Assembly (NCBI RefSeq): GCF_000143415.4
Contig: NW_003314262.1
Coordinates: 3,420,405 to 3,484,404, forward strand
DNA from: Selaginella moellendorffii
Lineage: Eukaryota; Plantae; Lycopodiophyta
Direction: 5' to 3'
DNA: 64,000 nucleotides
Notes under the pieces: generated by a model
Databases searched by the model: none
What the model saw: only the letters and a program-made list of their open reading frames with translations
What the model was told of the DNA's origin: nothing
Shown here: piece by piece, positions 520 through 52,120 of the stretch
Layout of the letters: the number at the start of each line of letters is the position of its first letter
Numbering within the stretch: position 1 is the stretch's first letter
Program-made: the position numbers and the translations under genes

Positions 520-879
520 ATGGCGAGCAATGGCGCGGCATCGTCATCGAGCGCGACAGCGACGACGACGGTGACGCTGCAACAGCCGCGGCAACCGGAG
601 AGGCTGACGCTGCGCCTGGCGCCGCGGCGCAAGAAGAAGGTGAGTTGGAAGGCGGACACTGTCGACAACGAGTTCTTGGACAAGAAGAGCTCCAAGATTT
701 GCTGCATTTTCCACAAGGAGGAGGAATTCACGGACAGCAGCAGCAGCGAAGACGATGGCGATCCGGGCGATGAGAAGAAGAAGATGAAGAAGAAGGAGAA
801 ATTGGAACGGAAGAGCTCGAGAATGGATGGATCGTCCTCTTCCAAACACCATGAACACCACGAGTGTTGTAAGAAATAA
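520..879 (+). CDS. INH3: Protein phosphatase 1 inhibitor-3 (PPP1R11/Ypi1 family)
   Basis: KKKVSWKADTVDNEFLDKKSSKICCIFHK, with the RVxW-type motif and CCI motif, followed by an acidic/Ser tail. Confidence 0.93.
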   Translation: MASNGAASSSSATATTTVTLQQPRQPERLTLRLAPRRKKKVSWKADTVDNEFLDKKSSKICCIFHKEEEFTDSSSSEDDGDPGDEKKKMKKKEKLERKSSRMDGSSSSKHHEHHECCKK

Positions 880-948: not shown

Positions 949-2123
949 ATGGCGATGGCGCTGGCGCGCGCCCGGGTAGCGCATTTTGCGAGAGGCGCGG
1001 CCGGGATCGGCAGCGCGCATCACAGGAGGTAATGTGATCCATTTCGATCGATCGATTCTTCGTTGCTGATGGAAGCTAGGGTTTATCAGGGGCAATACGA
1101 CCTCTATTCACGACTTTGATCTGTTTGGCAAAATGAAAGAGAGCTCGGGGCGCGTCGCCGTGGATGCGTAAGTTCTCTTTTTTTTACGGAAACTCCATTG
1201 GTTTCTTTCTTTTGCTTGAGGTTCTTTGTTTCTCTTGAGTTTTTTAAGAAAAAACTTGAGCCCTTGTTTTCCTTCTTCTATATTTTTTGCTTTGAGAACT
1301 TCTGTGTTTATTTGTTTCTCTTGCGTTTTATGAGAAGTTTGAGAACTCGAGCTCTTTTGTTTTCCTTCTTCTAGATTTTTTGCTTTGAGAACTTCTGTGT
1401 TTCTTTGTTTCTCCTGCGCTTTTTGAGAAGTTTGAGAACTTGAGCTCTTTTTATTTCTTTCTTCTAGATTCAACTTCGTTTTCTTTGTTTCTCTTGCGAT
1501 TTTTGAGAAGTTTGAGAACTTTAAGCTCTTCTTTTTTCTATGGTGTTTTTTCTTTATGTTAATCTTTCTCACTTCTGTGCAGACTAAGTGAGGAAAGCTT
1601 CTCGGTGGATCAGGTCGAATATTTCGATTCAATCATATGCCTTAGCAAGTTTGTCCTGTCATGGACTCCGAAAACGTTTGAAGAAATCACCCCCGAAAGG
1701 TCTGTTTTCCTTTCTTTTCCTTCGTGCTAGTTTCTCTAAACTGAAACGATCGTCTTTGCAGCTTGGCGATTGTTGATCTACTGACTCCAACTCCAGGTTC
1801 TCCACTGAAACACTCCAGCTCTCGCAAACTTCTCTAATGTTTTCTCCATCTCCACAGAGATCTTGGTGCTCGGAACCGGGAACACGACGAAGTTTCCCAG
1901 CAAAGAAGTGAAGGAGTTTCTTAAATCCAGAAATATCAAGATCGAATCCGTCGATTCGGTACGTCTCGTAACAATTCCATTTTGTCCTCACTCGCAAAGT
2001 TTTTCTCCCTTCAAACAGAGGCATGCTGCCATCGCATTCAATTTCATGAACGTCGAGTGCCGCGACGTAGTGGCCGCAATGCTGCCTTGCGGCAAAGAAC
2101 CCGAGCGCACCCATCCTTTCTAA
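949..2123 (+). CDS. NDUFAF3: NDUFAF3/Mth938-domain complex I assembly factor, 6 exons (949-1028, 1090-1167, 1583-1699, 1762-1796, 1858-1958, 2019-2123)
   Basis: GT-AG splicing keeps the frame: FSVDQVEYFDSIICLSKFVLSWTPKTFEEITPESL...PEILVLGTG...IESVDSRHAAIAFNFMNVECRDVVAAMLP; Arg/Ala-rich N-terminus resembles a transit peptide. Confidence 0.88.
1255..1545. repeat. About 90-bp minisatellite (about 3 degenerate copies) in NDUFAF3 intron 2
   Basis: Repeated TTTTGCTTTGAGAACTTCTGTGTTT...GAGAAGTTTGAGAACT...GAGCTCTTTT. Confidence 0.85.
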
Positions 2124-3352
2124 GAACATGACACACTCCTTCGTCGCCAAAAGGTGCGTTTGCTCGATCCAATCCATCAATCACTTCAAGGATTCAGTCA
2201 GTACCAGAGAATCGAATTTTTTTTTTCTCCTGCCTTTTGCACACTCGTCAACTCTGCAGTGCCAAAACGGTGGAGAAAAGGAGAGAGAATGCAAAAAAAA
2301 TGGAGGAAGAAAGCTTAAGTTACAATATAAACTGGCCCGACGCGTTCGTCTCGAGCGAAAGGAGAATGGGCAAAACGAAAAGAAAACAAGGAACAAGCCA
2401 CGTACGGTGGACTGGTGCGTTGACTGGTGCTGGGATGGCGTTGGCTTGTCGCCCTGGGGCGCGACAGGGAGAATATCCCCCGGGAATACTTAATTCTCAG
2501 CGAGAGTGGAACACGTTACAAAGTCTTCACGCAATCTAACTGAGGTTGCCGCCGTTGCTTTGGACAAAACAAAACAAAACAAACAAAGAGATGGAAATCG
2601 AAATCCTGAGCTCTAAGTTAAGGTTTAAAGTCTAGTAATTAAACTGGTTGGGCATTTGCAACGTCTTGGCTTTAAAGGCAAAACATTCGTACCAGCATTC
2701 CCCAAAAGATCTACCGGGGCAAATACGATACGTCAGCCACAAGACGAGAGACGGTCATCAAGGGTATCATTCTTTGGTGTGAATGCGAAGAAAGAAAGAA
2801 AGAATCGCACACATTTGCATTGTCCCCCTCGGTTGCACAAACCATGTAAAAAGTATATGATATGCGGTCCACATATAAATTATCGTGCGCATGCATGGTA
2901 CGCATTATAGCGGACACAACCGGATTTTCTTTCCATTCTTTTTTCCTCTTTTTTTCTCCTTTTGTCAGAATCAAAGTGTTTTTTCTTTTTTGGCTCTCGC
3001 ATTGGTCGTGAGTGAGCGGACGAGTGGCCGGAACGGGGTTGAGCGACAATTTGATAATTGGGCCATCATAGGTGAGAAATGGCCACCGTTTCCCAATCAA
3101 AATAAAAATGGAGTAAGAGGAGAAAAAATGGGCCACAGAAAAGATGTGGATTTTCCCGGGCCCGCCACCAAACAAAGCCCGGGCGTCATCCGTGACATGT
3201 CCACCGTCATCCGTGACGCCACCCTTCACTTGGCGTGCACGGCAGGCCTCCCTCACGGGCGCACGGGAGTGGACGGGCCACGCCCGTCGGCCCGTCACGG
3301 CCGCCAACTGTGTGCGAAACGACGTGCGGAATATTTCATATGATGCCGTGTA

Positions 3353-3381
3353 GAATATTCCCTGCGCCGCGGCGAATATTC
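3353..3381. promoter_or_regulatory. P1BS (GNATATNC) pair
   Basis: GAATATTC at 3353 and 3374. Confidence 0.6.
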
Positions 3382-4415
3382 GCGCGTTTGACACGAGGTG
3401 TGCTGCTCTGCAGTAGCTTGCCTCTGGTGCGAAGCAACCGTGGGAGGCTTGTTTTTACTTTTTTTCCACTTCGTTTGTTGTTGTCCATCATCATCACTCA
3501 TATATCTTGTGCATGTGCTATTGAGGCAGACGAGGCAAAAGTGGATAGAGTTTTGTTGACACATCAAAGTGTAGAGACCAAGCCAGTGTTACGGCGGTGA
3601 CACGGGCAGATTAGATTCTACTCCAATTGGGCCTGATCCTTGCATCTCGAGTGCAAACAATTGCCCCCATTGTACAGATGGCTTTAGGGGAGAGAGATAA
3701 AGTTTTTAGTCGTATTAGAGGTTCTACCAACATGCCAAGGCACTTCATTCTGCCGAGCCAGCGAAGAAACCTTTGATCCAACAGCAACAGCAAGTGCAAG
3801 GATTTGGCGAGACTTTGTTGTTGTTGCTTGACAACTGGCGAGCGCTGAGAGAAACACCCACCCAAAAAAGAATCAAGCCTCTTGTCTTTCCACATCGTAC
3901 AAAAGAATGTTGCCACCTTCGGGCAAATGCGGGCTTCCAAAGGCTTTCACCACGAGATCGCATATAGATCTCTCCTCTTTCGTTTTCAAGTTCCAGTCTC
4001 CGGCTAAGTGGAACATACAAGTAAAGTGCGCCACCTTTACAAGGAAAGGGGAGATGCAGTTTTCATTTGGTCAACACGGCAGCCTTTTGCATTACAAGAC
4101 TAATTTATATTCTCTTATTCTACGCGAAGATTCTCGCTCTCCATTGTAGTGTGTGTTGTTTATGTGAGGCGCATTATAGACGGGCTATATAGGAAGGGAG
4201 AAGTCCTCCAGAATCATTCACTCTCTCACTCTTTCATTTTCTCCGAGAGGAGAAATTGGGTGTTGGTCTTTGGGCAAGTGCCGAAATGTTTGGAGGGAGC
4301 AATGGCAATGTTTGTTGGGTGGTCGGATGGGTTTGGACCCACAATTGCTGGTGTGAGGATTGAATGCACGAGCCCAGAAAAAAACCCAAAAGATTGGCGT
4401 GCTCCAGTGTGTATA

Positions 4416-4418
<3 letters not shown>

Positions 4419-4448
<30 letters not shown>
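4419..4448. repeat. (TG)15 microsatellite
   Basis: Direct reading. Confidence 0.95.
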
Positions 4449-4452
<4 letters not shown>

Positions 4453-5034
4453 CAACGCAAACGCGGGAGAGAGACCAAATTGCAAAAGGGAGGAGCGATG
4501 GATGAGCGCTTGCTTGGCACTGAGTGTGCTTTTCGGGGCTTTGAAAGGCGACTAGACAGTGGAATGGATTGCGAATTCCATCCCCCAAATGGATTGATGG
4601 AGCTAGAGAGTTGTGGAGGGGATTGGGATAGATTTTCCTTTTTTTCTCTTCTTTATCTTGTCTCTTGCATCACGCTGCTGTCACCTTTGCTTTTCCTGCC
4701 CTAATCTTGGGCCGTTGACGGCTGTGACGCCAAAGGTGACGGAGCCCGCCACTAGAAACGCTACGAGCGGGCGATTGATTCGAATTGGATCCGGGATTGC
4801 CGTTGTCTGTCCTCTCCGGGCAGGCAACAACGCATTCTTGTGCCCCGCCGGGAAAAATGAATGCCGTGGTTTTTCCTTGGCCGAATTATTGCACTGCTTG
4901 GCTTGCTAAAGCCCAACAAAAAAAAAGAAAAGAAAAACGGAGATGCTTCCAGTCAGGAAACGCCTCAACCCTAAAGAAAATCCATCCGCCACCCGACCGT
5001 TTTTTGTCGCGCGCAAATAAATTCAAAGGTCAAG

Positions 5035-5092
5035 GAATATCCCCCGCACGGAGGGACGAGAGCATATTCCGGTAAAGACCAGAAGTATATGC
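5035..5092. promoter_or_regulatory. P1BS triplet
   Basis: GAATATCC 5035, GCATATTC 5062, GTATATGC 5085. Confidence 0.65.
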
Positions 5093-5930
5093 CGTTGGTT
5101 CATCACTAGGTTTTTCACCGGCAAGCAATAGTATAAGTGGTAGGCTTTCTCGTAGTCCCTTGCTGTGGCGTGGCGGAGACTCCTGTCGTGGTAAAACGGA
5201 AAATGTACCGTGGGCAAACTTGGAGGGTTACGTGCAATCAAGGGGAAGGAGTTTGCTCACACGCGAGCGGGCGAGCAAGATAGAGATCGGCGAGAGCGAG
5301 ATTCCATTTGCGCCAGGGGAATCATCCCGCTTGTTGGGGTGGCATCAAACACGGAATCTAGCTTAGTCTGCTGTTGCTTAACGAGGGAACCAGGCGAAAA
5401 CATGCACCGTGCAGTTAGAGCCAATCCCTTAAAAAAAAGAAACCGCGAAAAAAAAGGAAGTATTATTTTAAAAATGGAAGGATGGAACACTCACAATCTA
5501 TACGCCACTGCTGCCCCCTGCCAGGCTTTTCCCTTTGGGCTTTTGTAGCTTGGAAGATTGGGAACAAAAGTAACACCAAGGTGTGCAATCCAAGAGAAAA
5601 ATGTTACTTTGAAGCAACCCCTATTAGTATATTCGCTTGGGGATCGATCTTTGCTCCATCCCCATCGATCAATCCATGCCAAGAACTTAGAATTCACGAA
5701 GTATAACAAACCTGGAAAGGCGTGCCACCACGGTCATTGTGTTTGTGTGTGTTGGAGCGATGATCCTTCCTTCCAGATCCAAGCTGTTACTTAGAAGCAA
5801 TCGTCCAGATCGCTCTTCTAAAGTCTCGCTAGGGTTTCTTTTCTACCCGCGTTTGCTCACCAAACTTCCATAAACCCCTCACGGCAAACAAACATGTTGG
5901 ACCTGTGTTCTCCGCGAGGAGATGCCGCCC

Positions 5931-5963
5931 GGATATTCCGCGGCCACTCGGCCGGGAATATTC
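5931..5963. promoter_or_regulatory. P1BS pair
   Basis: GGATATTC 5931, GAATATTC 5956. Confidence 0.6.
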
Positions 5964-6270
5964 GCCGGCCGGGGGACGTTTGACCCGCGCCCACGTCAGC
6001 GTCAGGGGAGCAATTACCCGGGGCCGGTAAACCCCGGTTGTCAAACGTTGTAACGAATCTACGGCTCGCATGCTGCCACAGTGGCGGGGATATTGATGAC
6101 CCCGTGACCGCCGTCCATGTCAACGCCGCCTAGACGGCCGAGATCTGGCCAGCTCGCGGGAATAAAAAAGTACATTCCGTATGGTGGATCCGACGGCGCC
6201 CGCTGGAGGGTGCCATCCAACGGCCACCAGCCGACGGCAAAAGAAATGGGTTGTGTGTATAGTGTTGGCT

Positions 6271-6414
6271 ATGGTGCTTGTCCTCTATCGGGGTTTGTTG
6301 TGTATTCTTGTTTCCTTCTTTTTTAGGGCGTGTGTTGAAATCCTTGAGAGTCTTTCCGTGTTGCGGAGCGATCATAGGAGCCAGATCGCATTTCTTGCAA
6401 GCGGCAGTGGATGA
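6271..6414 (+). other. Candidate peptide uORF upstream of the MYND F-box gene
   Basis: ATG 6271 (in frame with ATG 6181) to TGA 6414; ends ...CVEILESLSVLRSDHRSQIAFLASGSG*. Confidence 0.35.
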
Positions 6415-6635
6415 TTCCCTTACTCTTTCCTTTTCTTCCTCTTTTTGGCCGATCTTGAGCTTTTTTAGCTCGCAAGACGCGATTTTCCTGCCCTTGCCCG
6501 GAGGAAAGGATCAAGATGAGCTCCGGATTCCCGCGACGCGCCTGGCAGGAGCGCTGTGGATCGAAAATCCGCCCGGAGCGTTCTTGAATCTTGTCGCGGC
6601 GCTAGTAGCATTCGTCTCGAGGACGCTCATCGCCA

Positions 6636-8403
6636 ATGAGGACGAGAAGGGGGAACTATCCATCGCCGACGGACGGCATAATCTTTAGCATCAAGCCATA
6701 CTCTCACAAGCGCCAGCGCCAGGGATCCTTCGACGCCGCCGAGCGGCCATGCAAGTTCTCGCGCGTCGCCGGATCCTCCAGGAAATCCACCACTCCATGC
6801 GCCTTCGATTTTGTCCCAGACGATCTCCTTGTCGACATCGCCATGGCGCTGGTCTCCACCGCCTCGTCGCCGGCCGATCTCTTCAACATGATGCTCATGT
6901 GAGTCTCGATCTCTCGAAATATCGCTCCTCTCGCTCGATCTCTTCCGAAATATCGCTCCTCTCGCTCTCCTCGCTCGATCTCTTCCGAAATATCGCTCCT
7001 CGCTCTCGATCTTTCCCCGACTCATCGCGCGCTGTGTGTTCTTCCAGATGCCGGAGATTCTGCGCCGCCGCGACGCATCCACAGGTCTTGGCCAGAGTAT
7101 CGCCTCAAGCATTCGCTGTCAAGGCTGGGAGCTGGTCCGCGGGATCGCATCGATTCCTCAAGCAATGCGCCGACGTCGGCAATGTGGAAGCGCTCTACAC
7201 GCTGGGAATGGTGAGTGAAGAGTAGCAATCAGTGTGTGAGAGAGTAGAGATCTCTTCTTCGTTCCATGCTTGGTTTTGGTTCAATAGCATAGGTTCCATG
7301 CTTGGTTTTGGTTCCTTAGTCGTGGATTCGTTGTTCTTCCTTCTCATGATAAGTGGTCTTTTGATGGGCAGATTCGCTTCTACTGCTTGAACAACAGCAG
7401 CGGCGCCTCATTGATGGCCAAGGCGGCGGTGGCGTCGCACGCCGCGGCGCTCCACTCCCTGGCGGTGATTCACTTCAATGGTAGCGGCGGGCGGCGAAAG
7501 GACAAGAACCTCAAAGCCGGGGTGGCGCTGTGCATGCGAGCGGCGTCGCTGGGTCACGTCGACGCCATCCGCGAGCTCGGGCACTGCCTCCAGGACGGCT
7601 ATGGAGTTGTGAAGAACGTACTCCAGGGGCGGCGGCTGCTGCTCGAGGCCAACGCCCGGGAGGCGGCGGCGGCGGTGGCGGCCGCCTTCCCCAAGAACCT
7701 CATGGAGCTGGCGCTCAAGCGGACTTCTCGGACAGGCTGCGCCAGCTGCCCGCATCACAGGTTCTTCACGCTGCCGCCGTCGACCAAGGCGGACATCTTC
7801 CAAAAGGCGGTCTTGGACAGCGCTGGGATCGTCGCTGGTGGTGGTGGTGGTGGTGGAGGTGGTGGTGGTGGCGCTGGCGGCGGCGCCACCAATGCGAGTG
7901 CAGCAAATGCCATGGAGCGGCACCCGGTGTTCAAGCTGCTCCAAAACGGTGGCTGCGCGCTGCTGAGCGACTTCGGCTGCAACGTGCCCCCGGCCAAGGT
8001 GCACGTCGCCAACAAGTTTCTGGTGGAGTGGTTTGCGCTGCACCCGACGTCGGCGGCGGGGCTGCGCCTGTGCTCGCATGCAAACTGCGGGCGGCCCGAG
8101 ACGAGGCGGCACGAGTTCCGGCGCTGCTCGGCGTGCGGCCGCGTCAACTACTGCTCGCGGGCGTGCCAGGCATTGGACTGGAAGCTGCGGCACAAGTACC
8201 ATTGCATCCCGGTGGCCGACTGGGAGAACCGGGAGGACAGGCAATTGGACGGGGAGGAGAACCAGCGCGGTGGCGACGAGGCGGAGGAGGAGGAAGACGA
8301 GGAGGATGGCGATGACGACGAGATGGAGATTGGTCGCCAGGATAATCAACAGCCAGGGGAGGAGAGTCACGCGTACGATCTAGGAGGTGAGGATCACAGG
8401 TGA
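6636..8403 (+). CDS. F-box / Sel1-like (HCP) repeat / MYND zinc-finger protein (At1g67340/At5g50450 family); exons 6636-6898, 7048-7210, 7372-8403
   Basis: MRTRRG start, FDFVPDDLLVDI F-box-like segment, GNVEALYTLGMIRFYC, HAAALHSLAVIHFNGSGG, CSHANCGRPETRRHEFRRCSACGRVNYCSRACQALDWKLRHK. Confidence 0.93.
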
Positions 8404-8823
8404 GACGAGCGAGAGATTGAGATCGAGAGAGAGAGAGAAGTGGGTTTTTTGGTTCTTCCCATCTTCTTCCTCCTCCTCTGTTAGCTCTCGAGGCACGCAC
8501 GCACGCACACAACAAACTCGACACACAGATTGGATCGCCATCGCCATCGTCGTCATCGTCATCGACAAGAAGAGACGATCGATGGGGGGAATTTTTTTTT
8601 GCTCTCCCTCACACATGGAAACCGGGGAGGCGAGAGTTTTGTGTGTGGATGGATCCGTTAGTTGGGACTCTCGCCAAAGCGGTTATAGAGAAGAGAGAGA
8701 GAGAGAAGAGCTCTCTCTTGTTAGTCCAAAAGGAGGAGGCTAGCTCACACAAGCTCACAAGTTTGTTCTTTTCTCTTTGTGGTGTGAAGAAAAACAGTTT
8801 TTTCTCGTGTCATGTGGCCTGGA

Positions 8824-8877
8824 GCATATTCGAGGGGATATCCTTCGATATGGTATATTCCATGGACGCGAATATGC
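8824..8877. promoter_or_regulatory. P1BS quadruplet downstream of the MYND gene
   Basis: GCATATTC 8824, GGATATCC 8836, GTATATTC 8853, GAATATGC 8870. Confidence 0.65.
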
Positions 8878-8892
8878 CAGGGGATTCTCTCT

Positions 8893-11107
8893 TTAGTAGT
8901 CTGTAACGCTCGGGGTTCTCTTGTAGTACTTGTCCCGCAAGAGGTTGGTCACGTTGTTACGTTGGCAGCCTTCCTCGATCATCCGCCTGTCCACCTTCTT
9001 GGCGAGGTGGTACTTTTGGCTCCTGCAATAGGCATCAATGAGCGCGTTGTAAACGTAAACGTTGGGCTTTTGTCCCGCCTTACGAAAGTCCTGTAGTGTT
9101 GGGTGCGTGCGTGAGAAAAAGGAAAAGAAATGCGCAGGCAGGAGAATCAAAATCCTGTATAGAGCATGGAACCACGGGAGGAAGTACTTCGGTCATGCTG
9201 CGGAGATGACCCACGAAAGAGAAAGAAAGGATGGTGGATCTTGTGAAGGACGAAGGAGAGCTACAAGGAATGAAATGAATGAGATGAATGAAAAGAGAGC
9301 TACAAGGAAAGTAGAAGAAGATGGAGCTAATGAGAGGAGAGCTACAAGGAAAGAGATGGAGCTTACAAGGAATGGAAGAATGAAAGGAGATGACGCTTAG
9401 AAGGAATGAAAGAATGAAAGGGAGCTACAAGGAGAAAAAGAATGGAAGAATGGAAGGAGAGCTAAAAGGAACTTAGAAGGAAACGGAGCTTACCCGATAA
9501 ATGTTCCTGGCTTGCTGCCACATGAGCTCCTTCCCGCAGGCTCGGATGAGCGATGCCACGACGTGAGTGTTTGGAACGCACCGCCGCTGCTTCATGTGCT
9601 CGTAAAGCCTCAACGCTACCTCGACCTGCTTGGCGTTCTCGCAAGCCACCAGCAGCGGACCAAACGTAACTTCGTTTGGAGCGATCCCGGTTTGCTCCAT
9701 CTCCTGGACGAGTGAGAGCGCCGCTTCCCAGTTCTTCGACTTCTGGCAGGCGACCAGGATCACGTTGTAAACCTCCCTGTCCAGCTTCATCCCCGACGAC
9801 TTGACGCTGTGGAAGAAAAGCATCGCTCGATCAAACTCCCTGGCCGCGATGAGGCCGTTTAGAACCGCATTGACGGTGTAGAAGTCGGGCGCCACCCCGG
9901 ACGCCTTCATCCGCGGCAGCAAGTCGAGAACGATCTCCCACTTCCCTGCCTTGCCGAGCGCTCGCATCAAAACGTTGTACGTGACGATGGTCGGCTTGCA
10001 ACCGGACTCCAGCATCTCCTTGAAGAAGGTGAGAGCGACGAGCCAGCGTCCCTGCGTCGCGCAGACGCAAACCAGGCCTCTGTAGATTCCATCCGTCGCC
10101 TTGAGGCCCTGTGAGTTCATCCGCGCGTAGGCGTCGAGAGCCAAGTCGGCCTGGTTCGTCTGGACGAAGGTGCTCACGAGTAGGCAGTAAGTTCCAACGT
10201 TCTCGACGCATCCTTCCTTTCGCATCCTCTCCCACGTCTGGAGAACTCTCTCCAGCTTGTGGCCTCGCCCGTAGGCCGCCAGCATCGTGTTGTACATGGC
10301 GACGTCGGGCTTGAGCGAGCCATGCACGACGAGCTCGCTAAACATCCTGTGAGCCGACTCCCAGCCTTGGACGTGAGCCAGCGCTCGCATGACGGCCGTA
10401 TAAGTGTAGAGCGTCGGGGCCACCCGATCCTGCTTCATCCTCTCGAAGATGGCGATGGCGTCGGCCTCGTCGCCATCTTTCATGAGTCCGGTGATGAGAG
10501 AGTTGTAAGCGTTGGCGTGGATACCTCTCTTCCTGTCGCTCAGCCATTCCAGGACTTTGAAGGCTGTTCTTCGTCGGCCAGCTCTCGAGAGCTTGATGAC
10601 CAGCCAGGATCCTGTGTCCTTGGTTATCGCTCGCCTAAAGCTTTCTAGAACTGGAGCAACGGGATCGTCAGCTCCCAGCCTGCGAAGAGCGTCGTGAAGC
10701 CGCAAGAAATCATACTTCCCTCCAGCAGAAGTAGCATAGCGGCGATAAATGGCTCCTATCAACTTCTTCGTGTCATCTGTTTGATCCGATAAGCTAATTC
10801 TACTCGCAGCTATTGGCCCCCGATCTTCTTCACAAGGAACAACCTTTGGTGTGAGATTTTTATCTGCCACTACACTGCTTTCCTCTCCCACAACAACTGG
10901 ATTTTGCGCTGGATTCTCATAGAAACCGCTAAACATCCATTGGAAGTTCCCGACAATCGCATTTCCGGTCGATGCTACGTTCTTGGCGTCTGCTACATTG
11001 CTAGCACGACCTAATTTCCCCCCTCTCCCCGCGTCTATCACCGATCTAGAGATGAAAGGAATGGCGATACCTGGCAGCGCATTTTGACAGCTTCCAATCG
11101 CCCACAT
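8893..11107 (-). CDS. P-class pentatricopeptide repeat protein (At3g29290/EMB2076-like); exons 11107-9494 and 9090-8893
   Basis: Tandem 35-aa P motifs (YNSLITGL, YTAVMRAL, YNTMLAAY, YCLLVSTF...); GT-AG intron joins a final PPR exon; start codon uncertain. Confidence 0.9.
9250..9470. repeat. GA-rich degenerate repeat (GAGCTACAAGGA units) in the PPR intron
   Basis: Four GAGCTACAAGGA copies plus variants. Confidence 0.75.
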
Positions 11108-11691
11108 CAGCGGCAGCGCCCCCTCACATCGCTGGAGGGCGCAAAAGCAAAATCCCCGCACCACAAGAACCCTATCTATCCGTTAGCGTTTTTAGGGCTC
11201 CTCATTTTCAAACATTCGGAATATTCGCCGGCATCCATTCAAACCTCCCGGTAGTCTTCGTTCTCCTTTTGCTTGCGAGCGACGCCACCATCAAAAGATT
11301 CAGGCGATTGCGAGCAACGCAAATCAAGTTTTCTTGTGGTGGATTGACTGGTGCTTTCGTGTAAGCTTCTCGCTCGTCATTGCGATTTCCAAAGAGAACG
11401 GAGGGCTTTGGGAAACTTGCGAGGACAATTCAAACAATTTGCCCCTGGATAGAGGAAGAAACTCCGGCCTTCACGCAACCTAGCCCTTTGTGATTGCTCG
11501 CATCGAGTGCGTTGGTAAAAAGGAAGGTGTGTGGAAGGAGGAAACCCCCAATTTCTATCTGTCTATCTATTTTCTGGGTGGAAGTCATAGGCATAGCCAT
11601 TTGCCAAAAGTTTTGTCAATGTTTGGTTGCATGATTTCGCGCCCTCCAACAATGATTTTGATCCGTGGCAAACTAGAACAAGACTTCTTGC

Positions 11692-47110: not shown

Positions 47111-47160
47111 CAGGATCTCCATATGTAGGAAACGAGAAATTTTCAGATCATACTAGTGAA

Positions 47161-47740
47161 TGGAATGTTTCCTGTTCTGGGTACAAATTCCTATGAGCTG
47201 CATATAAGCTTGTGGTTGTGGTTCGGTCCCAAACTTTGGATGTATTGTATTCGCCTGAGGAAACATTAGCATATACAACACTCAAACGGTGATAACTTTC
47301 TCCATCACTATGAAGCAAACATGTGCGCAATGCAAGAACCCGACCGTCACGGGTTGCTATAACGTATTGTGCAGGTGGTGTGTGCACCTGATATGGAGTA
47401 TAATGTAATAATTACCAAGGAGAATTATGTGGTGTTTGAGTTTTGTTCATGAATAAATTAGTCAAAACTCCAAGTTCCCCAAGGAGGACCCTTACAACCA
47501 CGCCTGACTGGGCTATGACCAGTGGTTTTTATCAGAATTTTGTACATAACTAAAACATTCTGAATATTATGCCTTGAATTTTTTTGAGAGCCTGAAGACG
47601 AATGCTGTCAGATTGGATTTGATTAATTTGACTTTATTCAATGATGGCTACAATGACATTAGAGATGGACATGACTCATTTTTACATTTCCTCCTAAGGC
47701 TTTAGTTCATTTAGGGAGTCGAAATGTACTATTTAGCTTT
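47161..47740. repeat. Direct repeat copy 2 of 43726-44302
   Basis: See copy 1. Confidence 0.92.
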
Positions 47741-48061
47741 TATAGCTACTTGAAGTTTTCCCAACGCATGATTTAATAATGCCCGCTACACGTGGTATAA
47801 TAGTATTGCCCCAGCCCAGGCTTGTAGGGTAACTTCGTAACACTAAAAATTGGGATGTTGCTCCTCCATTCATGACTCATTTCATGTTGATTAGTCTGTT
47901 TCTGTTAACAAGTCTGCTGAGCAACAAGATGTTACTTACTTATTCTTGCACTGATTTGGAGTTAGTAGGCTTTGTTTTTTGCACTTTCTTGATTGAACCT
48001 TGATTTCAGCCTTTAAACCTTGTAAGAACTTTGGTGCTTTTATTTATAGCACTATGAACAA

Positions 48062-48152
48062 CTCTGGAAGACCCAGAAAGCTGAAGATGCGACGGATCCG
48101 TGATGCGCTCCATATGCGATCCTGTTCAAAGCCGCCCCATCTCCCCATTTTC
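48062..48152 (-). pseudogene. Inverted F-box 5' fragment
   Basis: Reverse complement resembles ATGGGGAGATGGGG...TTTGAACAGGAT...CATCTTCAGCTTTCTGGGTCTTCCAGAG. Confidence 0.7.
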
Positions 48153-48239
48153 TCGCTCAGGTGCACCTAGGGCAGTTATTGTTCAAGCCAAAAACCAGAT
48201 TTATTTATGGTTATTAATTTTCAAGTCATTCCGACTCAT

Positions 48240-48479
48240 TCAGCTCAAGTAGCAGCATCCTCCCTCATATCCAATCGCCTGGTTGATCCGCAGACAATTG
48301 CCCTGGTATCCATACTGCTTCCCACCTTTCCTCTGACAGTTATGACCACTAAGTTTCCCATATATCTTGCCAGTGCAGACTTTGTCCCCAGGATTACAAG
48401 ATTCAGAGAGAACGTTGAAGTGGCAGCCCTGAAAAACAAGAGCCATTATGAGGAGACAAACCAGCACAACAGGCTTCAT
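48240..48479 (-). CDS. Secreted cysteine-rich (defensin-like) peptide 2
   Basis: 79-aa paralogue of 44932-45171 with all Cys conserved. Confidence 0.8.
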   Translation of the reverse strand: MKPVVLVCLLIMALVFQGCHFNVLSESCNPGDKVCTGKIYGKLSGHNCQRKGGKQYGYQGNCLRINQAIGYEGGCCYLS

Positions 48480-48939
48480 CTTGTTGTTGAAGAGAAACAA
48501 ACTAATGAACTTGGAACGAGCAGATGAGGATTGGCGAATTGAGGGACAACACTCACAAATTTATGGCAAGGGACTGTCAGCCAGAGGACAAGGAAAACGT
48601 GGAAAATGTTCAGACTGAAAGGCTGCCGGTGCGTTCAGAGTAGACTAAGTCTGTTCTCGATAAGAACAAACGTGTTGAGATGGAATAAATTACTGCAAAG
48701 TGAGTCTGACAATATGAAAAAACAAATTCTGTGTTGAATGTGATAGCACAAGCTCAATAGTGGAACACTCGAACTTCCACTATTGAGCATGTACTCACCT
48801 TTGTTCATACAATTATGATAATCAAATTTCCCAGACATTTGGGATTGAAAAACGAGAGACGTCATCACAAATCAGTGCCTGCATGCTAAGATTAAATCTA
48901 ATATTGCCAATCCAGGTAAAATCTAGGCAACCTTGGGAT

Positions 48940-51210
48940 GTTGAGGGGGGGTCTGATCTACCTCGATTGCCAAACCCTGAGCACAAGACAAGGAGCTGCT
49001 GCTGCCCCTAAAGGTTATGTGGAAGAATGGCTGCAATTTGTTTGGGTGACCTATGGTTATCTAGACATATCATAGTGAATTTGGTTGATTAATATTCAAC
49101 ATCATTTTGAAGCTTTTAAGAGTTTGAGGAGCAAACCTTGCGTATCATCTAAGGATCACAAGGCAAATATTGCAAAAAGAGTTCCATATCAGCTGCATGG
49201 ATGCTGCTCAACCTTGAATTTCGAACTTGCAACATTAAGGTGCCTAGGTTTGGTCAGATGCTTGCATATTCTGGATTGCCAATGTTGTGTTCAAAGCCGA
49301 ATATCAAAAGAGGTCCTAAAGCTCACAAGAACATGCAATACCTGGAAAGTTCACGACAACAGCATTATAAACAACACTTTCAAGATGGAGCACTTTAAGG
49401 AGATTTAGTTCATTCAACAGCTCCAATGGTAGCAATGGATCCACATTTGCTCACAATTCTTCTAAGATATTATGGCTACAAGGCAGAAAATCGCTGCCAG
49501 CATTTTACAAAGGTAAAAAAGTTGTTGAGAGGGTTTGGAGTGCTAAATTCAGCAATGCAGTCAAGGTATTTCCTCCTAACTTTGCATGATGAAGCTGATT
49601 CATGGTTTGCTATGGTGAATATGGAATCACCTCCTCTACTCATGATGCTCAAGATCATGTTTTTGAAGTGGTTTGAACCTACAATAACAAAGGAAATGGT
49701 AATGATAGAGTGAGACGCATTCAAACAAAGACCAAATGAATCTATCCAAGCCTATAATGAGAGAGTTTAGGTGTATGATGCACGGTGCCAAGAATATGGA
49801 GTTGATAACAACAGTCTATGAATGGTGAAGTCTTATAGAGACTTTTTGCATTCAATTTTAATAGGTGAGTTTGGTACAAAGATCCATCAACATTGCAAGC
49901 AACAATGAAAGAAGCTATTGCGCAAGATAAAAAGCGATTGCAAGAACTAGGGCCTATTATCAACAATGTGTACCATGCTTAACTGCTTCCACAATCACCA
50001 TGCTTTCTACCTTAACAACAAAGGAGTCATCATCAGCAAGAGCAAGATATGCAAGGATCTCAAACTACCTTCAATGCAACATATCTATATCAAGATGTAA
50101 CTACTAGACAGAGTCAGCAGTTTGGGCAGCAATAGGCATATTCATAATCAAATAATTATCCATCATACAAACCTCCATGGTTATTGTGCATCACAACAGC
50201 ATTCAAGTGATTACAATTCATACCAACATCTTTGTTATGCATGTGATGAATACGACCATGATGATGAGCATTGTGCAATAAGGCAATGGATCTACATAAA
50301 CATTGGTTATGATTAGTTAGCAAACACTTGGCCAACTTCATCAAAAGCACGAGGGGTCTTCACACAATTGTTTCTTGACAGTTGCCTTCTTAATCTTGCA
50401 ATGGCTAGCTCCATTAATTACTTTATTGATTGCCTCAACCACTTCAGTTTTATTTGAATGTTGTGGTTCCAACTAGTGCTTAAAGATTGAAAACTTAGAT
50501 AAGTTCCTAGGTTATCCAAGCATACATGTTAATTTTGACTTTGGTTTTGGAAGTTTTTGTTGAAGATGATTTTGATTTGCTTGGGTTTTGTGCAATAGAG
50601 CTACCTTGCAATGAGTTAAAGGTTGCATCTTATAACTTGATAGAGGATGGTTTTCATCAAGCAACAACTACTAAAAAGGTTGAACATCTACAATAAGATT
50701 TAGTTCCAACCATTTCAAGTTTAACAATCAAGCTAGTGACAACTACTCTTAGCTTCCAACCTTTATAGAGTTGTTTTAAGGATGTGAAACAAGTACTTCA
50801 TATTTTTTAAGCCTTTATTTAGGTGTTTGTTGCAACATCAACTAGTTTCTAGTACAAAGATTGGTTTGGACTAATCAAATACAATATCAACAGGTCTTAT
50901 TCCACTACTAAATTTTTTGACAACAACATCAATAGTTTTTTTCAAGCAAGCTCCTCTTGAGTGACATTTACAATAAACTCTGACCTCAATGACTAGTTTC
51001 AAGCAAGCTGATTCTATTTTGCATTCACAAGTTCTTTACCAGCGACCCAATAGGTTTCAACCACTTCATTACACTCAACTAGCAAATCACTTAACAAGAG
51101 GTGTTTTCATCAATTTCAACTTCATCATGATGTCATTGGTTACTTGGGTTTTTGTACAAATGGTCCATGTTGTCAACTTTTCTCGAGCTTTTCACAATGA
51201 TGACAATTCC
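48940..51210 (+). mobile_element. Decayed retrotransposon gag region
   Basis: YFLLTLHDEADSWF...MFLKWF gag-like segment; CYACDEYDHDDEHC zinc knuckle; many stops. Confidence 0.65.
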
Positions 51211-51712
51211 CTTAGTGTTGGCAATAGTTGCCCCGGTGACATGTTTTGTAGCGGGGCGAGCCTATGTTATGTAGTCTCCTTATTTTCCCGGCGCTAACTT
51301 TTTTTGTGTAAACTTTGATCAGTTAGAAAAACTGGAGCTCGTTCCGAGTCAGAGTGTAAGCTGCTCGGAAGCTAATCAGTCTTGATTTGAACAGATGGCT
51401 TCTGGTTTACGAGAAAGGCGCCAGAGAATTGACTGTTTACCAAGCGTGAGGGAGAAGAACACTTCTATCAAAGTTGGAACACAACTATTCAGAGATTAAT
51501 AATTTATAAACACAATTTATCAAATAGAAGTGTTTTAAGTACTAAAACATGTTTTTATATAGTACATTAATTGTATCAAAGCACTATGTTAGTTTATCGT
51601 GTACGTTTAAGTTAAAAACAAAATTGCCGTCCACTTCTTCTTATTAATCAAGAATGGCATAGCATGTATTGAGTGAGTGGATTCTTAATTTGGGGCTTAT
51701 ATTTCTTCAAAG

Positions 51713-52066
51713 ATGACTAGTTCAGTATTCTTTCTTGTCTTCTTAGCGGTTGCCATTCAGGTAAATGAGAATTTTATCACTGAAAAGATTAAGAAGACTA
51801 TAACTTCTTTTGTATGCTAGGTGCAAGCATGCGGGCAATTTAGAAATTCCTGCAGTGAAGTCCATGTGTCCAAGGACGGCACGGTCACTACGAATTGTGC
51901 TTCCAAATTGACTCTCACATTTGGTGGCTCGCCTTTTTTCCTTTGCAACGATGAAGGTTCTGTCTGCAGCTATGAAATCAAACATGGAAAACTCGAAGTT
52001 GTAGACCTGGATACCTGTATATCATTTGTCACAGATCATCTGGAGGCTTGTGACCCATGCGCGTAA
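51713..52066 (+). CDS. Secreted 97-aa cyanovirin-N-homology (CVNH)-like protein; exons 51713-51760, 51821-52066
   Basis: Signal exon MTSSVFFLVFLAVAIQ, phase-0 60-nt intron, then CGQFRNSCSEVHV...TTNC...CNDEGSV...DLDTCI. Confidence 0.6.
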
Positions 52067-52120
52067 TTACAAAGGATGTAACTTCTATAGATGATATCAA
52101 TGACTACGTGTTAAACAGTA

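What the first reader, a model, noticed from the sequence alone, without database searches (positions are those of the whole stretch)
2471..8877. MYND F-box gene bracketed by 13 P1BS boxes in tight clusters: candidate phosphate-starvation-controlled ubiquitin-ligase module
Seen: GNATATNC at 2471, 3353, 3374, 5035, 5062, 5085, 5627, 5931, 5956 upstream and 8824, 8836, 8853, 8870 downstream. At equal base frequencies about 1.6 would be expected in 6.4 kb. Most lie in pairs to quadruplets 12-27 bp apart, within a 4.5-kb intergenic region that is unusually long for this window. Established: GNATATNC is the binding site of PHR1-family MYB-CC factors. Inference: this F-box/Sel1/MYND gene is a strong direct PHR target with both 5' and 3' enhancers. 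I do not know of this link being described for the family, but have not searched.
Basis: partly seen in the sequence, partly recalled or inferred. Interest (0 to 1): 0.75.

Follow-up and report, generated by a model that had tools for sequence, protein, structure and literature searches.

The report
P1BS arrays around spikemoss F-box gene
In the spikemoss Selaginella moellendorffii, four tight clusters of the plant phosphate-starvation DNA motif surround an F-box/MYND ubiquitin-ligase gene. The clusters are real and far beyond chance, but only one sits where a promoter of that gene should be, relatives of the gene lack them, and no phosphate response has been shown.

Summary
All 13 GNATATNC sites lie at the stated coordinates, against 0.8-1.6 expected. 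They form four tight clusters plus two singles. The excess is specific to the exact motif: 13 of 28 ATAT-core 8-mers here carry the G..C flanks, against 16 of 288 in the rest of the window. No other tight pair occurs in about 86 kb of other S. moellendorffii DNA that I sampled.

- Only the pair at 5931/5956 (-705/-680 from the ATG) is placed like a promoter element of the F-box/TPR/MYND gene.
- The clusters at -1.6 kb and -3.3 kb lie in a 4.5-kb stretch with no called gene; the median gap here is about 480 bp. That stretch has no coding, Rfam, miR399-mimic or repeat signal. Two 750-bp segments in it are unusually alike between the two haplotypes.
- The 3' quadruplet lies 16 nt past the stop of a convergent PPR gene.
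- The S. moellendorffii paralogue and the Marchantia, Diphasiastrum and Nymphaea relatives have no such clusters.
- No paper found links this family to phosphate.

The scan has already noted P1BS arrays at other loci of this genome. Expression and PHR binding are untested.

The parts
949..2123 (+). Upstream neighbour, a DUF498 gene (171 aa). Its 3' end bounds the gap.
   Evidence: Gene call in L001, converted with L001 = window + 9481.
2471..2478 (.). Single P1BS (GAATATCC), 348 nt after the DUF498 stop.
   Evidence: kept in the other haplotype.
2874..3623 (.). Segment of low divergence between haplotypes (0.53% against 1.8% for the gap as a whole) that spans cluster 1. It is GC-rich.
   Evidence: Poisson P = 0.003, but the window was chosen after seeing the data.
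3329..3381 (.). Cluster 1: near-site GAATATTT at 3329, then GAATATTC at 3353 and 3374. It lies about 3.3 kb upstream of the F-box ATG, and a TATA-like CATATATC follows at about 3499.
5035..5092 (.). Cluster 2: GAATATCC, GCATATTC and GTATATGC, about 1.6 kb upstream of the ATG. A TATA-like AGTATAAG follows at about 5131. The third site is lost in the other haplotype through a 10-bp deletion.
5124..5873 (.). Second low-divergence segment (0.67%), directly downstream of cluster 2. It is a candidate unannotated transcript or a regulatory block.
   Evidence: P = 0.008, window chosen after seeing the data. No coding score, no Pfam hit, no unusual RNA folding.
5627..5634 (.). Single P1BS (GTATATTC), 1009 nt upstream of the ATG.
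5931..5963 (.). Cluster 3: the proximal pair GGATATTC and GAATATTC, at -705/-680 from the ATG. It lies about 200-240 nt upstream of a TATA-like AATAAAAAAG at about 6161.
6636..8403 (+). F-box/TPR_27/Sel1/zf-MYND gene, 485 aa, 'F-box protein At1g67340'-type. Exons: 6636-6898, 7048-7210, 7372-8403.
   Evidence: Gene call. Each exon is 98-100% identical to the allelic protein P0001. Pfam hits.
8824..8877 (.). Cluster 4: a quadruplet (GCATATTC, GGATATCC, GTATATTC, GAATATGC) in the convergent 3' zone. All four sites are kept in the other haplotype.
8893..11164 (-). Convergent PPR gene. Its stop codon lies 16 nt from cluster 4.
   Evidence: Gene calls; Pfam PPR hits.

Best explanation
The locus, S. 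moellendorffii GL377566.1 at about 3,422,875-3,429,281, carries four independently arisen arrays of the PHR-type MYB-CC dimer site.

Most likely these are working binding sites for the plant's PHR1-like factors. The three GAATATTC sites could also bind its NIGT1-like repressors. When phosphate is scarce, PHR is released from SPX-InsP8 inhibition and binds the arrays. The proximal pair, about 700 bp before the ATG, would then raise transcription of the F-box/TPR/MYND gene. That gene encodes a substrate adaptor of an SCF ubiquitin ligase, so the turnover of a still unknown target would become coupled to phosphate status.

The distal arrays (-1.6 kb and -3.3 kb) and the 3' quadruplet would act either as extra enhancers of the same gene or as promoters of unannotated non-coding transcripts.

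Shown here: the motif arrays, their specificity, the gene model and the lack of conservation in relatives. Inferred, not shown: PHR binding, phosphate induction and the choice of target gene.
For: - Exact sites and enrichment.
- Motif-specific enrichment: 13 of 28 against 16 of 288 for the G..C flank, and ATAT against 15 other palindromic cores.
- Half-sites are mostly GAAT (14 of 26), unlike the background sites, which are mostly GCAT.
- The clusters are not copies of one another or of any repeat, which fits selection on the motif itself.
- The F-box gene is the only called gene that faces the gap.
- The proximal pair has ordinary promoter geometry.
- GNATATNC is the PHR1 dimer site, GAATATTC is also a NIGT1 site, and S. 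moellendorffii has both families (PMC11082045).
- Among about 25 sampled gene starts, no other gene has two or more sites within 1 kb upstream.
Against: - There are no expression or binding data for this species.
- Nine of the 13 sites are more than 1 kb from the ATG or downstream of the gene, in a genome with gaps of about 0.5 kb.
- The paralogue has only two lone sites. Marchantia has none and Nymphaea has none upstream. Diphasiastrum has three distant sites in AT-rich DNA.
- No paper in the library links this family to phosphate.
- Keeping 12 of 13 sites between haplotypes is what 1.7% divergence predicts anyway.
- Earlier scan notes say the motif is frequent in this species' promoters. My 150-kb sample did not show that, but the sample is small.
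Confidence: 0.5

Rival explanations
1. The distal clusters 1 and 2, and perhaps the 3' quadruplet, are promoters of unannotated phosphate-starvation-induced non-coding transcripts. These would be tandem lncRNA genes in the 4.5-kb gap, or an antisense RNA from the convergent 3' zone. They would not be enhancers of the F-box gene. This reading can coexist with the proximal pair controlling the F-box gene.
For: - The gap is nearly ten times the median spacing.
- Each cluster is followed within 40-120 nt by a TATA-like box.
- The 750 bp directly downstream of cluster 2, and the block around cluster 1, diverge 0.5-0.7% between haplotypes, against about 2.5% in adjacent gap DNA and 1.55% in exon 3.
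- An AAATAAA lies just before cluster 2, where a transcript from cluster 1 could end.
- No ORF in the gap has coding potential or a Pfam hit, so any product would be non-coding.
Against: - There is no transcript evidence. Exact-product look-ups of two gap ORFs found nothing.
- There is no Rfam hit, no miR399-complementary site and no unusual folding.
- The low-divergence windows were chosen after seeing the data.
- The one published lncRNA GFF for this species that I tried to read was truncated in the held copy.
Confidence: 0.3
2. The arrays bind a different GARP or MYB-related factor with an overlapping core, and report another signal than phosphate, such as nitrogen status or the clock. Candidates are NIGT1/HHO on GAATATTC, or RVE/CCA1-type factors on AATATC.
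For: - GAATATTC is a documented NIGT1 dimer site (PMC11082045), and three of the 13 sites are GAATATTC.
- Several sites contain AATATC or GATATT.
- Earlier scan notes report such clusters at genes with no obvious link to phosphate; I did not test those notes.
Against: - Ten of the 13 sites are not GAATATTC, yet all fit the looser PHR consensus.
- The enrichment requires both the G and the C flank, as expected for a symmetric PHR-type dimer.
- No site matches the full evening element.
Confidence: 0.15
3. The clusters are non-functional: chance, or a by-product of mutation or repeats.
For: None positive. The only support is that no function has been demonstrated and that the arrays are not conserved in relatives.
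Against: - 13 sites against 0.8-1.4 expected, with a maximum of 4 in 1000 shuffles.
- The excess is specific to the motif.
- No similarity to repeats or transposable elements, and no duplication between clusters.
- The sites sit in GC-rich rather than AT-rich, low-complexity DNA.
Confidence: 0.05

Closest known systems
P1BS-containing promoters of phosphate-starvation-induced genes controlled by PHR1/PHL MYB-CC factors (Arabidopsis, rice)
   Same: The octamer GNATATNC is identical. Sites occur in multiples spaced 12-27 bp apart. One pair lies a few hundred bp upstream of a probable transcript start. PHR1-like proteins exist in this species (PMC11082045).
   Different: Most sites are far from the only called gene, or lie 3' of it. 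No phosphate response or PHR binding is known here. The gene family has no published phosphate link in the library searched.
IPS1/At4/Mt4-type phosphate-starvation lncRNAs (P1BS-driven miR399 target mimics)
   Same: P1BS clusters are followed by TATA-like boxes and by several hundred bp of non-coding DNA that differs little between the two haplotypes.
   Different: No miR399-complementary motif is present (0 matches with up to 3 mismatches). No transcript evidence exists, and the two candidate units share no motif.
Other dense P1BS arrays noted by this scan in S. moellendorffii (PHR-like gene, XIP aquaporin, GFT1/CBS shared promoter, DIPP-type Nudix)
   Same: Same genome and same motif, far beyond chance. 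The notes that compared relatives found the arrays lineage-specific, and all of them left the phosphate response untested.
   Different: Those arrays pack 3-9 sites into one short promoter. Here four smaller clusters are spread over 6.4 kb, and three of them are not in a recognised promoter. These are AI notes that I did not re-test.
Arabidopsis F-box protein At1g67340 / At5g50450 family (F-box + TPR/Sel1 + MYND zinc finger)
   Same: Same domain order. Identity is 63-64% to the Diphasiastrum and Marchantia members over exon 3, and NCBI names the allelic protein 'F-box protein At1g67340'.
   Different: The N-terminus is longer (485 aa against about 380-435). The F-box match is below the Pfam cut-off. 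No member's substrate or phosphate regulation turned up in the library searches.

Membership tests
P1BS / PHR1-regulated cis-element array | Sequence GNATATNC (imperfect palindrome) | tested here: met
   13 exact sites. The enrichment is specific to the G..C flanks and the ATAT core.
P1BS / PHR1-regulated cis-element array | Located in the proximal promoter of the regulated gene | tested here: inconclusive
   The pair at -705/-680 from the ATG fits. The other 11 sites are 1.0-4.2 kb upstream or 3' of the gene. The transcript start is unknown.
P1BS / PHR1-regulated cis-element array | Bound by a PHR-type MYB-CC dimer | not testable with these tools
   Needs EMSA, DAP-seq or ChIP. PHR1-like proteins in the species are known from the literature only (PMC11082045).
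P1BS / PHR1-regulated cis-element array | The associated gene is induced by phosphate starvation | not testable with these tools
   No S. moellendorffii phosphate-starvation transcriptome turned up.
F-box/TPR/MYND proteins (At1g67340-type) | N-terminal F-box | tested here: inconclusive
   F-box-like PF12937 scores 19.2 bits (cut-off 24.3, E = 0.001) at residues 60-101 of the allelic protein P0001. Relatives carry PF12937 in the precomputed domains.
F-box/TPR/MYND proteins (At1g67340-type) | Central TPR_27/Sel1-like repeats | tested here: met
   TPR_27 scores 43 bits, above its cut-off of 27. Sel1 scores 23.8-25.4 bits, below its cut-off.
F-box/TPR/MYND proteins (At1g67340-type) | C-terminal MYND zinc finger | tested here: met
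   zf-MYND scores 32.4-35.2 bits against a cut-off of 22.7.
IPS1/At4-type target-mimic lncRNA | Conserved motif complementary to miR399 | tested here: not met
   No match to the miR399 core on either strand with up to 3 mismatches.
IPS1/At4-type target-mimic lncRNA | Transcribed, phosphate-induced, non-coding | not testable with these tools
   The absence of coding potential was shown. Transcription could not be assessed.

The most novel reading that the evidence does not exclude
A lycophyte-specific phosphate-starvation locus in which PHR-type arrays drive two things. One is an SCF adaptor of the F-box/TPR/MYND family, which would be a new ubiquitin-ligase branch of phosphate signalling. The other is two tandem non-coding transcripts, plus a possible antisense RNA, in a plant for which I know of no reported miR399 (from memory, not checked here). 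These would be phosphate-responsive lncRNAs working by a mechanism other than the IPS1/miR399 mimicry of seed plants.
Probability: 0.12. Interest if true: 0.65.

Novelty: new member of a known kind. Interest (0 to 1): 0.33.

Why it matters
If the arrays work, they would add an uncharacterised and deeply conserved F-box/MYND adaptor to the phosphate-starvation regulon of an early vascular plant. They would also mark a compact, testable locus, with four separable motif clusters, for asking how PHR-type control is wired outside seed plants. The conserved blocks with no called gene next to two clusters would be candidates for phosphate-responsive lncRNAs in a lineage for which I know of no miR399/IPS1 report. 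As it stands, this is a well-supported cis-element observation with no functional data, and it is one of several such arrays in this genome.

Tried and rejected
- Repeat or transposable-element origin of the clusters: rejected. There is no similarity within the region, to the rest of the window or to other loci, and the clusters align only through the motif itself.
- Hidden protein-coding gene in the gap: no support. Fourteen ORFs have no Pfam hit. The best codon-usage score is 0.035 bits per codon, against 0.32 for a known exon.
- Known RNA family, miRNA hairpin or miR399 mimic: nothing found.
- Trait shared by the gene family: rejected.
- Conservation between haplotypes as evidence for the sites: uninformative at 1.7% divergence.
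- Transcript evidence: exact-product look-ups found only the genome records. The lncRNA GFF supplement of PMC9118565 is truncated before the Selaginella sheet.
- Two look-ups of long window ORFs to obtain gene calls for the middle of the window failed, as did one for a Ceratopteris relative.
- The bacterial promoter and terminator scan is irrelevant to a plant.
Exons were searched one by one, by reference.
- Literature searches for a link between F-box/MYND and phosphate found none.
Full report
**Origin of the window.** The window is Selaginella moellendorffii assembly GCA_000143415.2, scaffold GL377566.1, starting at about position 3,420,405. This follows from exact-product look-ups of two window ORFs and from the names of the best protein hits.

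**Gene calls for this stretch** (window coordinates):
- Ypi1-type phosphatase inhibitor gene, 520-879 (+).
- DUF498 gene, 949-2123 (+).
- 485-aa gene, 6636-8403 (+).
- PPR gene ending at 8893 (-).
- Nothing is called between 2124 and 6635.

**The observation.**
- For 2471-8877 the mononucleotide expectation is 1.4. A thousand local dinucleotide-preserving shuffles give mean 0.77 and maximum 4.
- The spacings inside clusters are 21, 27, 23, 25, 12, 17 and 17 bp.
- All seven adjacent pairs of 30 bp or less in the 64-kb window lie in this region. None occurs in a further 86 kb of S. moellendorffii DNA that I sampled: the rest of the window, 9.5 kb upstream of it, and the 21.8-kb paralogue locus.
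- The excess is specific to the motif. In the region, 13 of 28 8-mers with an ATAT core carry G at position 1 and C at position 8, against 16 of 288 in the rest of the window. With fifteen other palindromic 4-mer cores in the same GN-core-NC frame, the counts are 0-6.
- Half-sites are mostly GAAT (14 of 26). The scattered sites elsewhere in the window are mostly GCAT.
- A near-site (GAATATTT at 3329) extends cluster 1.
- The clusters are not copies of each other or of any repeat. BLAST within the region, and against the other loci, finds only the coding exons of the paralogue and relatives. Pairwise local alignment of the clusters finds only the motifs themselves.

**The gene.**
- Exon by exon, the three exons (6636-6898, 7048-7210, 7372-8403) are 98-100% identical to P0001. 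NCBI names P0001 'F-box protein At1g67340 [Selaginella moellendorffii]', and it is encoded on scaffold GL377581.1, the other haplotype.
- Pfam finds TPR_27 and zf-MYND above their cut-offs. Sel1 and F-box-like are below their cut-offs but in the expected places.
- The family is found across land plants. The best hits over exon 3 are 63-64% identical (Diphasiastrum, Marchantia), and there is one S. moellendorffii paralogue at 58%.

**Placement of the sites relative to genes.**
- The gap of 4512 bp is the second largest of 26 gaps in the fetched gene calls; the median is 478 bp.
- Only the pair at 5931/5956 has ordinary promoter geometry for the F-box gene. It lies at -705/-680 from the ATG, about 200-240 nt upstream of a TATA-like box at about 6161. 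The pyrimidine-rich stretch that follows looks like a 5' UTR.
- Cluster 2 (5035-5092) is 1.6 kb upstream and cluster 1 (3329-3381) is 3.3 kb upstream. A TATA-like box follows each of them within about 40-120 nt.
- The 3' quadruplet (8824-8877) is 421-474 nt past the F-box stop, but only 16-69 nt past the stop of the convergent PPR gene. It very probably lies inside at least one 3' UTR.
- 'Bracketed by enhancers' is therefore one reading among several.

**What else is in the gap.**
- Fourteen ORFs have no Pfam match.
- A codon-usage log-odds trained on local exons gives at best 0.035 bits per codon. A held-out PPR exon scores 0.32, and a deliberately frame-shifted exon scores -0.30.
- Rfam gives nothing credible.
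- A sliding-window fold finds no miRNA-like hairpin, and the 731-nt block after cluster 2 folds no better than shuffles on either strand.
- There is no miR399-complementary site.
- Two segments are unusually alike in the two haplotypes. Segment 2874-3623, spanning cluster 1, diverges 0.53%, and segment 5124-5873, directly after cluster 2, diverges 0.67%. Adjacent gap DNA diverges about 2.5% and exon 3 diverges 1.55%. Poisson P is 0.003 and 0.008, but the windows were chosen after seeing the data.
- This is suggestive of constrained elements, either regulatory blocks or non-coding transcripts. I could find no transcript evidence either way.

**Conservation of the arrays.**
- The other haplotype keeps 12 of the 13 sites. 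The site at 5085 is lost through a 10-bp deletion, and the site at 3374 changes at an N position. At 1.7% divergence this is what neutrality predicts.
- The S. moellendorffii paralogue has only two lone sites in its 2.5-kb upstream gap.
- The Marchantia relative (Mp1g18040) has no site from -4.6 kb to +0.6 kb.
- The duplicated Diphasiastrum locus has three lone sites 3.1-4.1 kb upstream, in 39%-GC DNA.
- The Nymphaea colorata relative has no site in 5 kb upstream.
- The arrays are therefore a feature of this locus, not of the gene family.

**Is the motif simply common in this species' promoters?** Earlier notes of this scan say both things. Dense arrays were reported at a PHR-like gene, an XIP aquaporin, a GFT1/CBS shared promoter and a DIPP-type Nudix gene. 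In my own sample of about 150 kb and about 25 independent gene starts, no other gene has two or more sites within 1 kb upstream, and no other tight pair exists. The sample is too small to settle a genome-wide claim, but in it clusters are not commonplace.

**Literature.** GNATATNC is the PHR1 dimer site, the GAATATTC subset is also bound by NIGT1 dimers, and S. moellendorffii has members of both subfamilies (PMC11082045; bioRxiv 10.1101/2022.04.15.488190). Searches for F-box + MYND + phosphate starvation, for At1g67340/At5g50450, for Mp1g18040 and for 'HCP-like ... MYND' returned nothing that links the family to phosphate. I found no S. moellendorffii phosphate-starvation transcriptome.

**Verdict.** The mechanism I think most likely (confidence about 0.5) is that PHR-type factors bind these arrays and that the proximal pair makes this F-box/TPR/MYND adaptor gene responsive to phosphate starvation. 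That the distal and 3' clusters serve unannotated non-coding transcripts rather than, or as well as, the F-box gene is a serious rival (about 0.3). A different GARP or MYB-related factor (about 0.15) and non-function (about 0.05) are less likely. Nothing about expression or binding is shown. I file this as a new member of a known kind, a putative PHR target with P1BS arrays, and rate its interest as moderate to low until strand-specific RNA-seq with and without phosphate is available.

Noticed in passing
window 47111-52120: This is the only gap larger than the one studied (5010 bp, between two convergent genes). It holds three isolated GNATATNC sites (47269, 49264, 50136) and no called gene.
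   Followed up: no
window 11219: A single perfect GAATATTC lies 55 nt upstream of the PPR gene's ATG (11164, minus strand), in the short divergent promoter shared with the next PPR gene. It is kept in the other haplotype (L003 14552).
   Followed up: partly
window 6891-7032: Intron 1 of the F-box gene consists largely of 31/40-bp tandem repeats (TCGCTCCTC...GAAATATCGCTCCTC).
   Followed up: no
window 7831-7881: A (GGT)n tract encodes a poly-glycine run in exon 3. It differs by a 6-bp in-frame indel between the two haplotypes.
   Followed up: partly
window 6517-6588: A 23-codon upstream ORF lies in the presumed 5' UTR of the F-box gene. The other haplotype has an 11-bp insertion at its end, so it is probably not conserved.
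   Followed up: partly
window 1217-1529: Three to four tandem copies of an 80-93-bp unit lie inside the span of the DUF498 gene. They give a lysine-rich spurious ORF on the minus strand.
   Followed up: no
window 9254-9478: Five copies of a unit of about 24 nt (AGGAGAGCTACAAGGAA-like) lie between the last two coding blocks of the PPR gene, presumably in its intron.
   Followed up: no
window 3374-3400 and 5956-5995: In clusters 1 and 3, GAATATTCGC is followed within 2-20 nt by CGTTTGAC (a W-box core, TTGAC). TGACG/CGTCA motifs lie nearby. This may be a composite element.
   Followed up: no
window 4416-4451: A (GT)n microsatellite in the middle of the gap, with a 4-bp length difference between haplotypes.
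   Followed up: no
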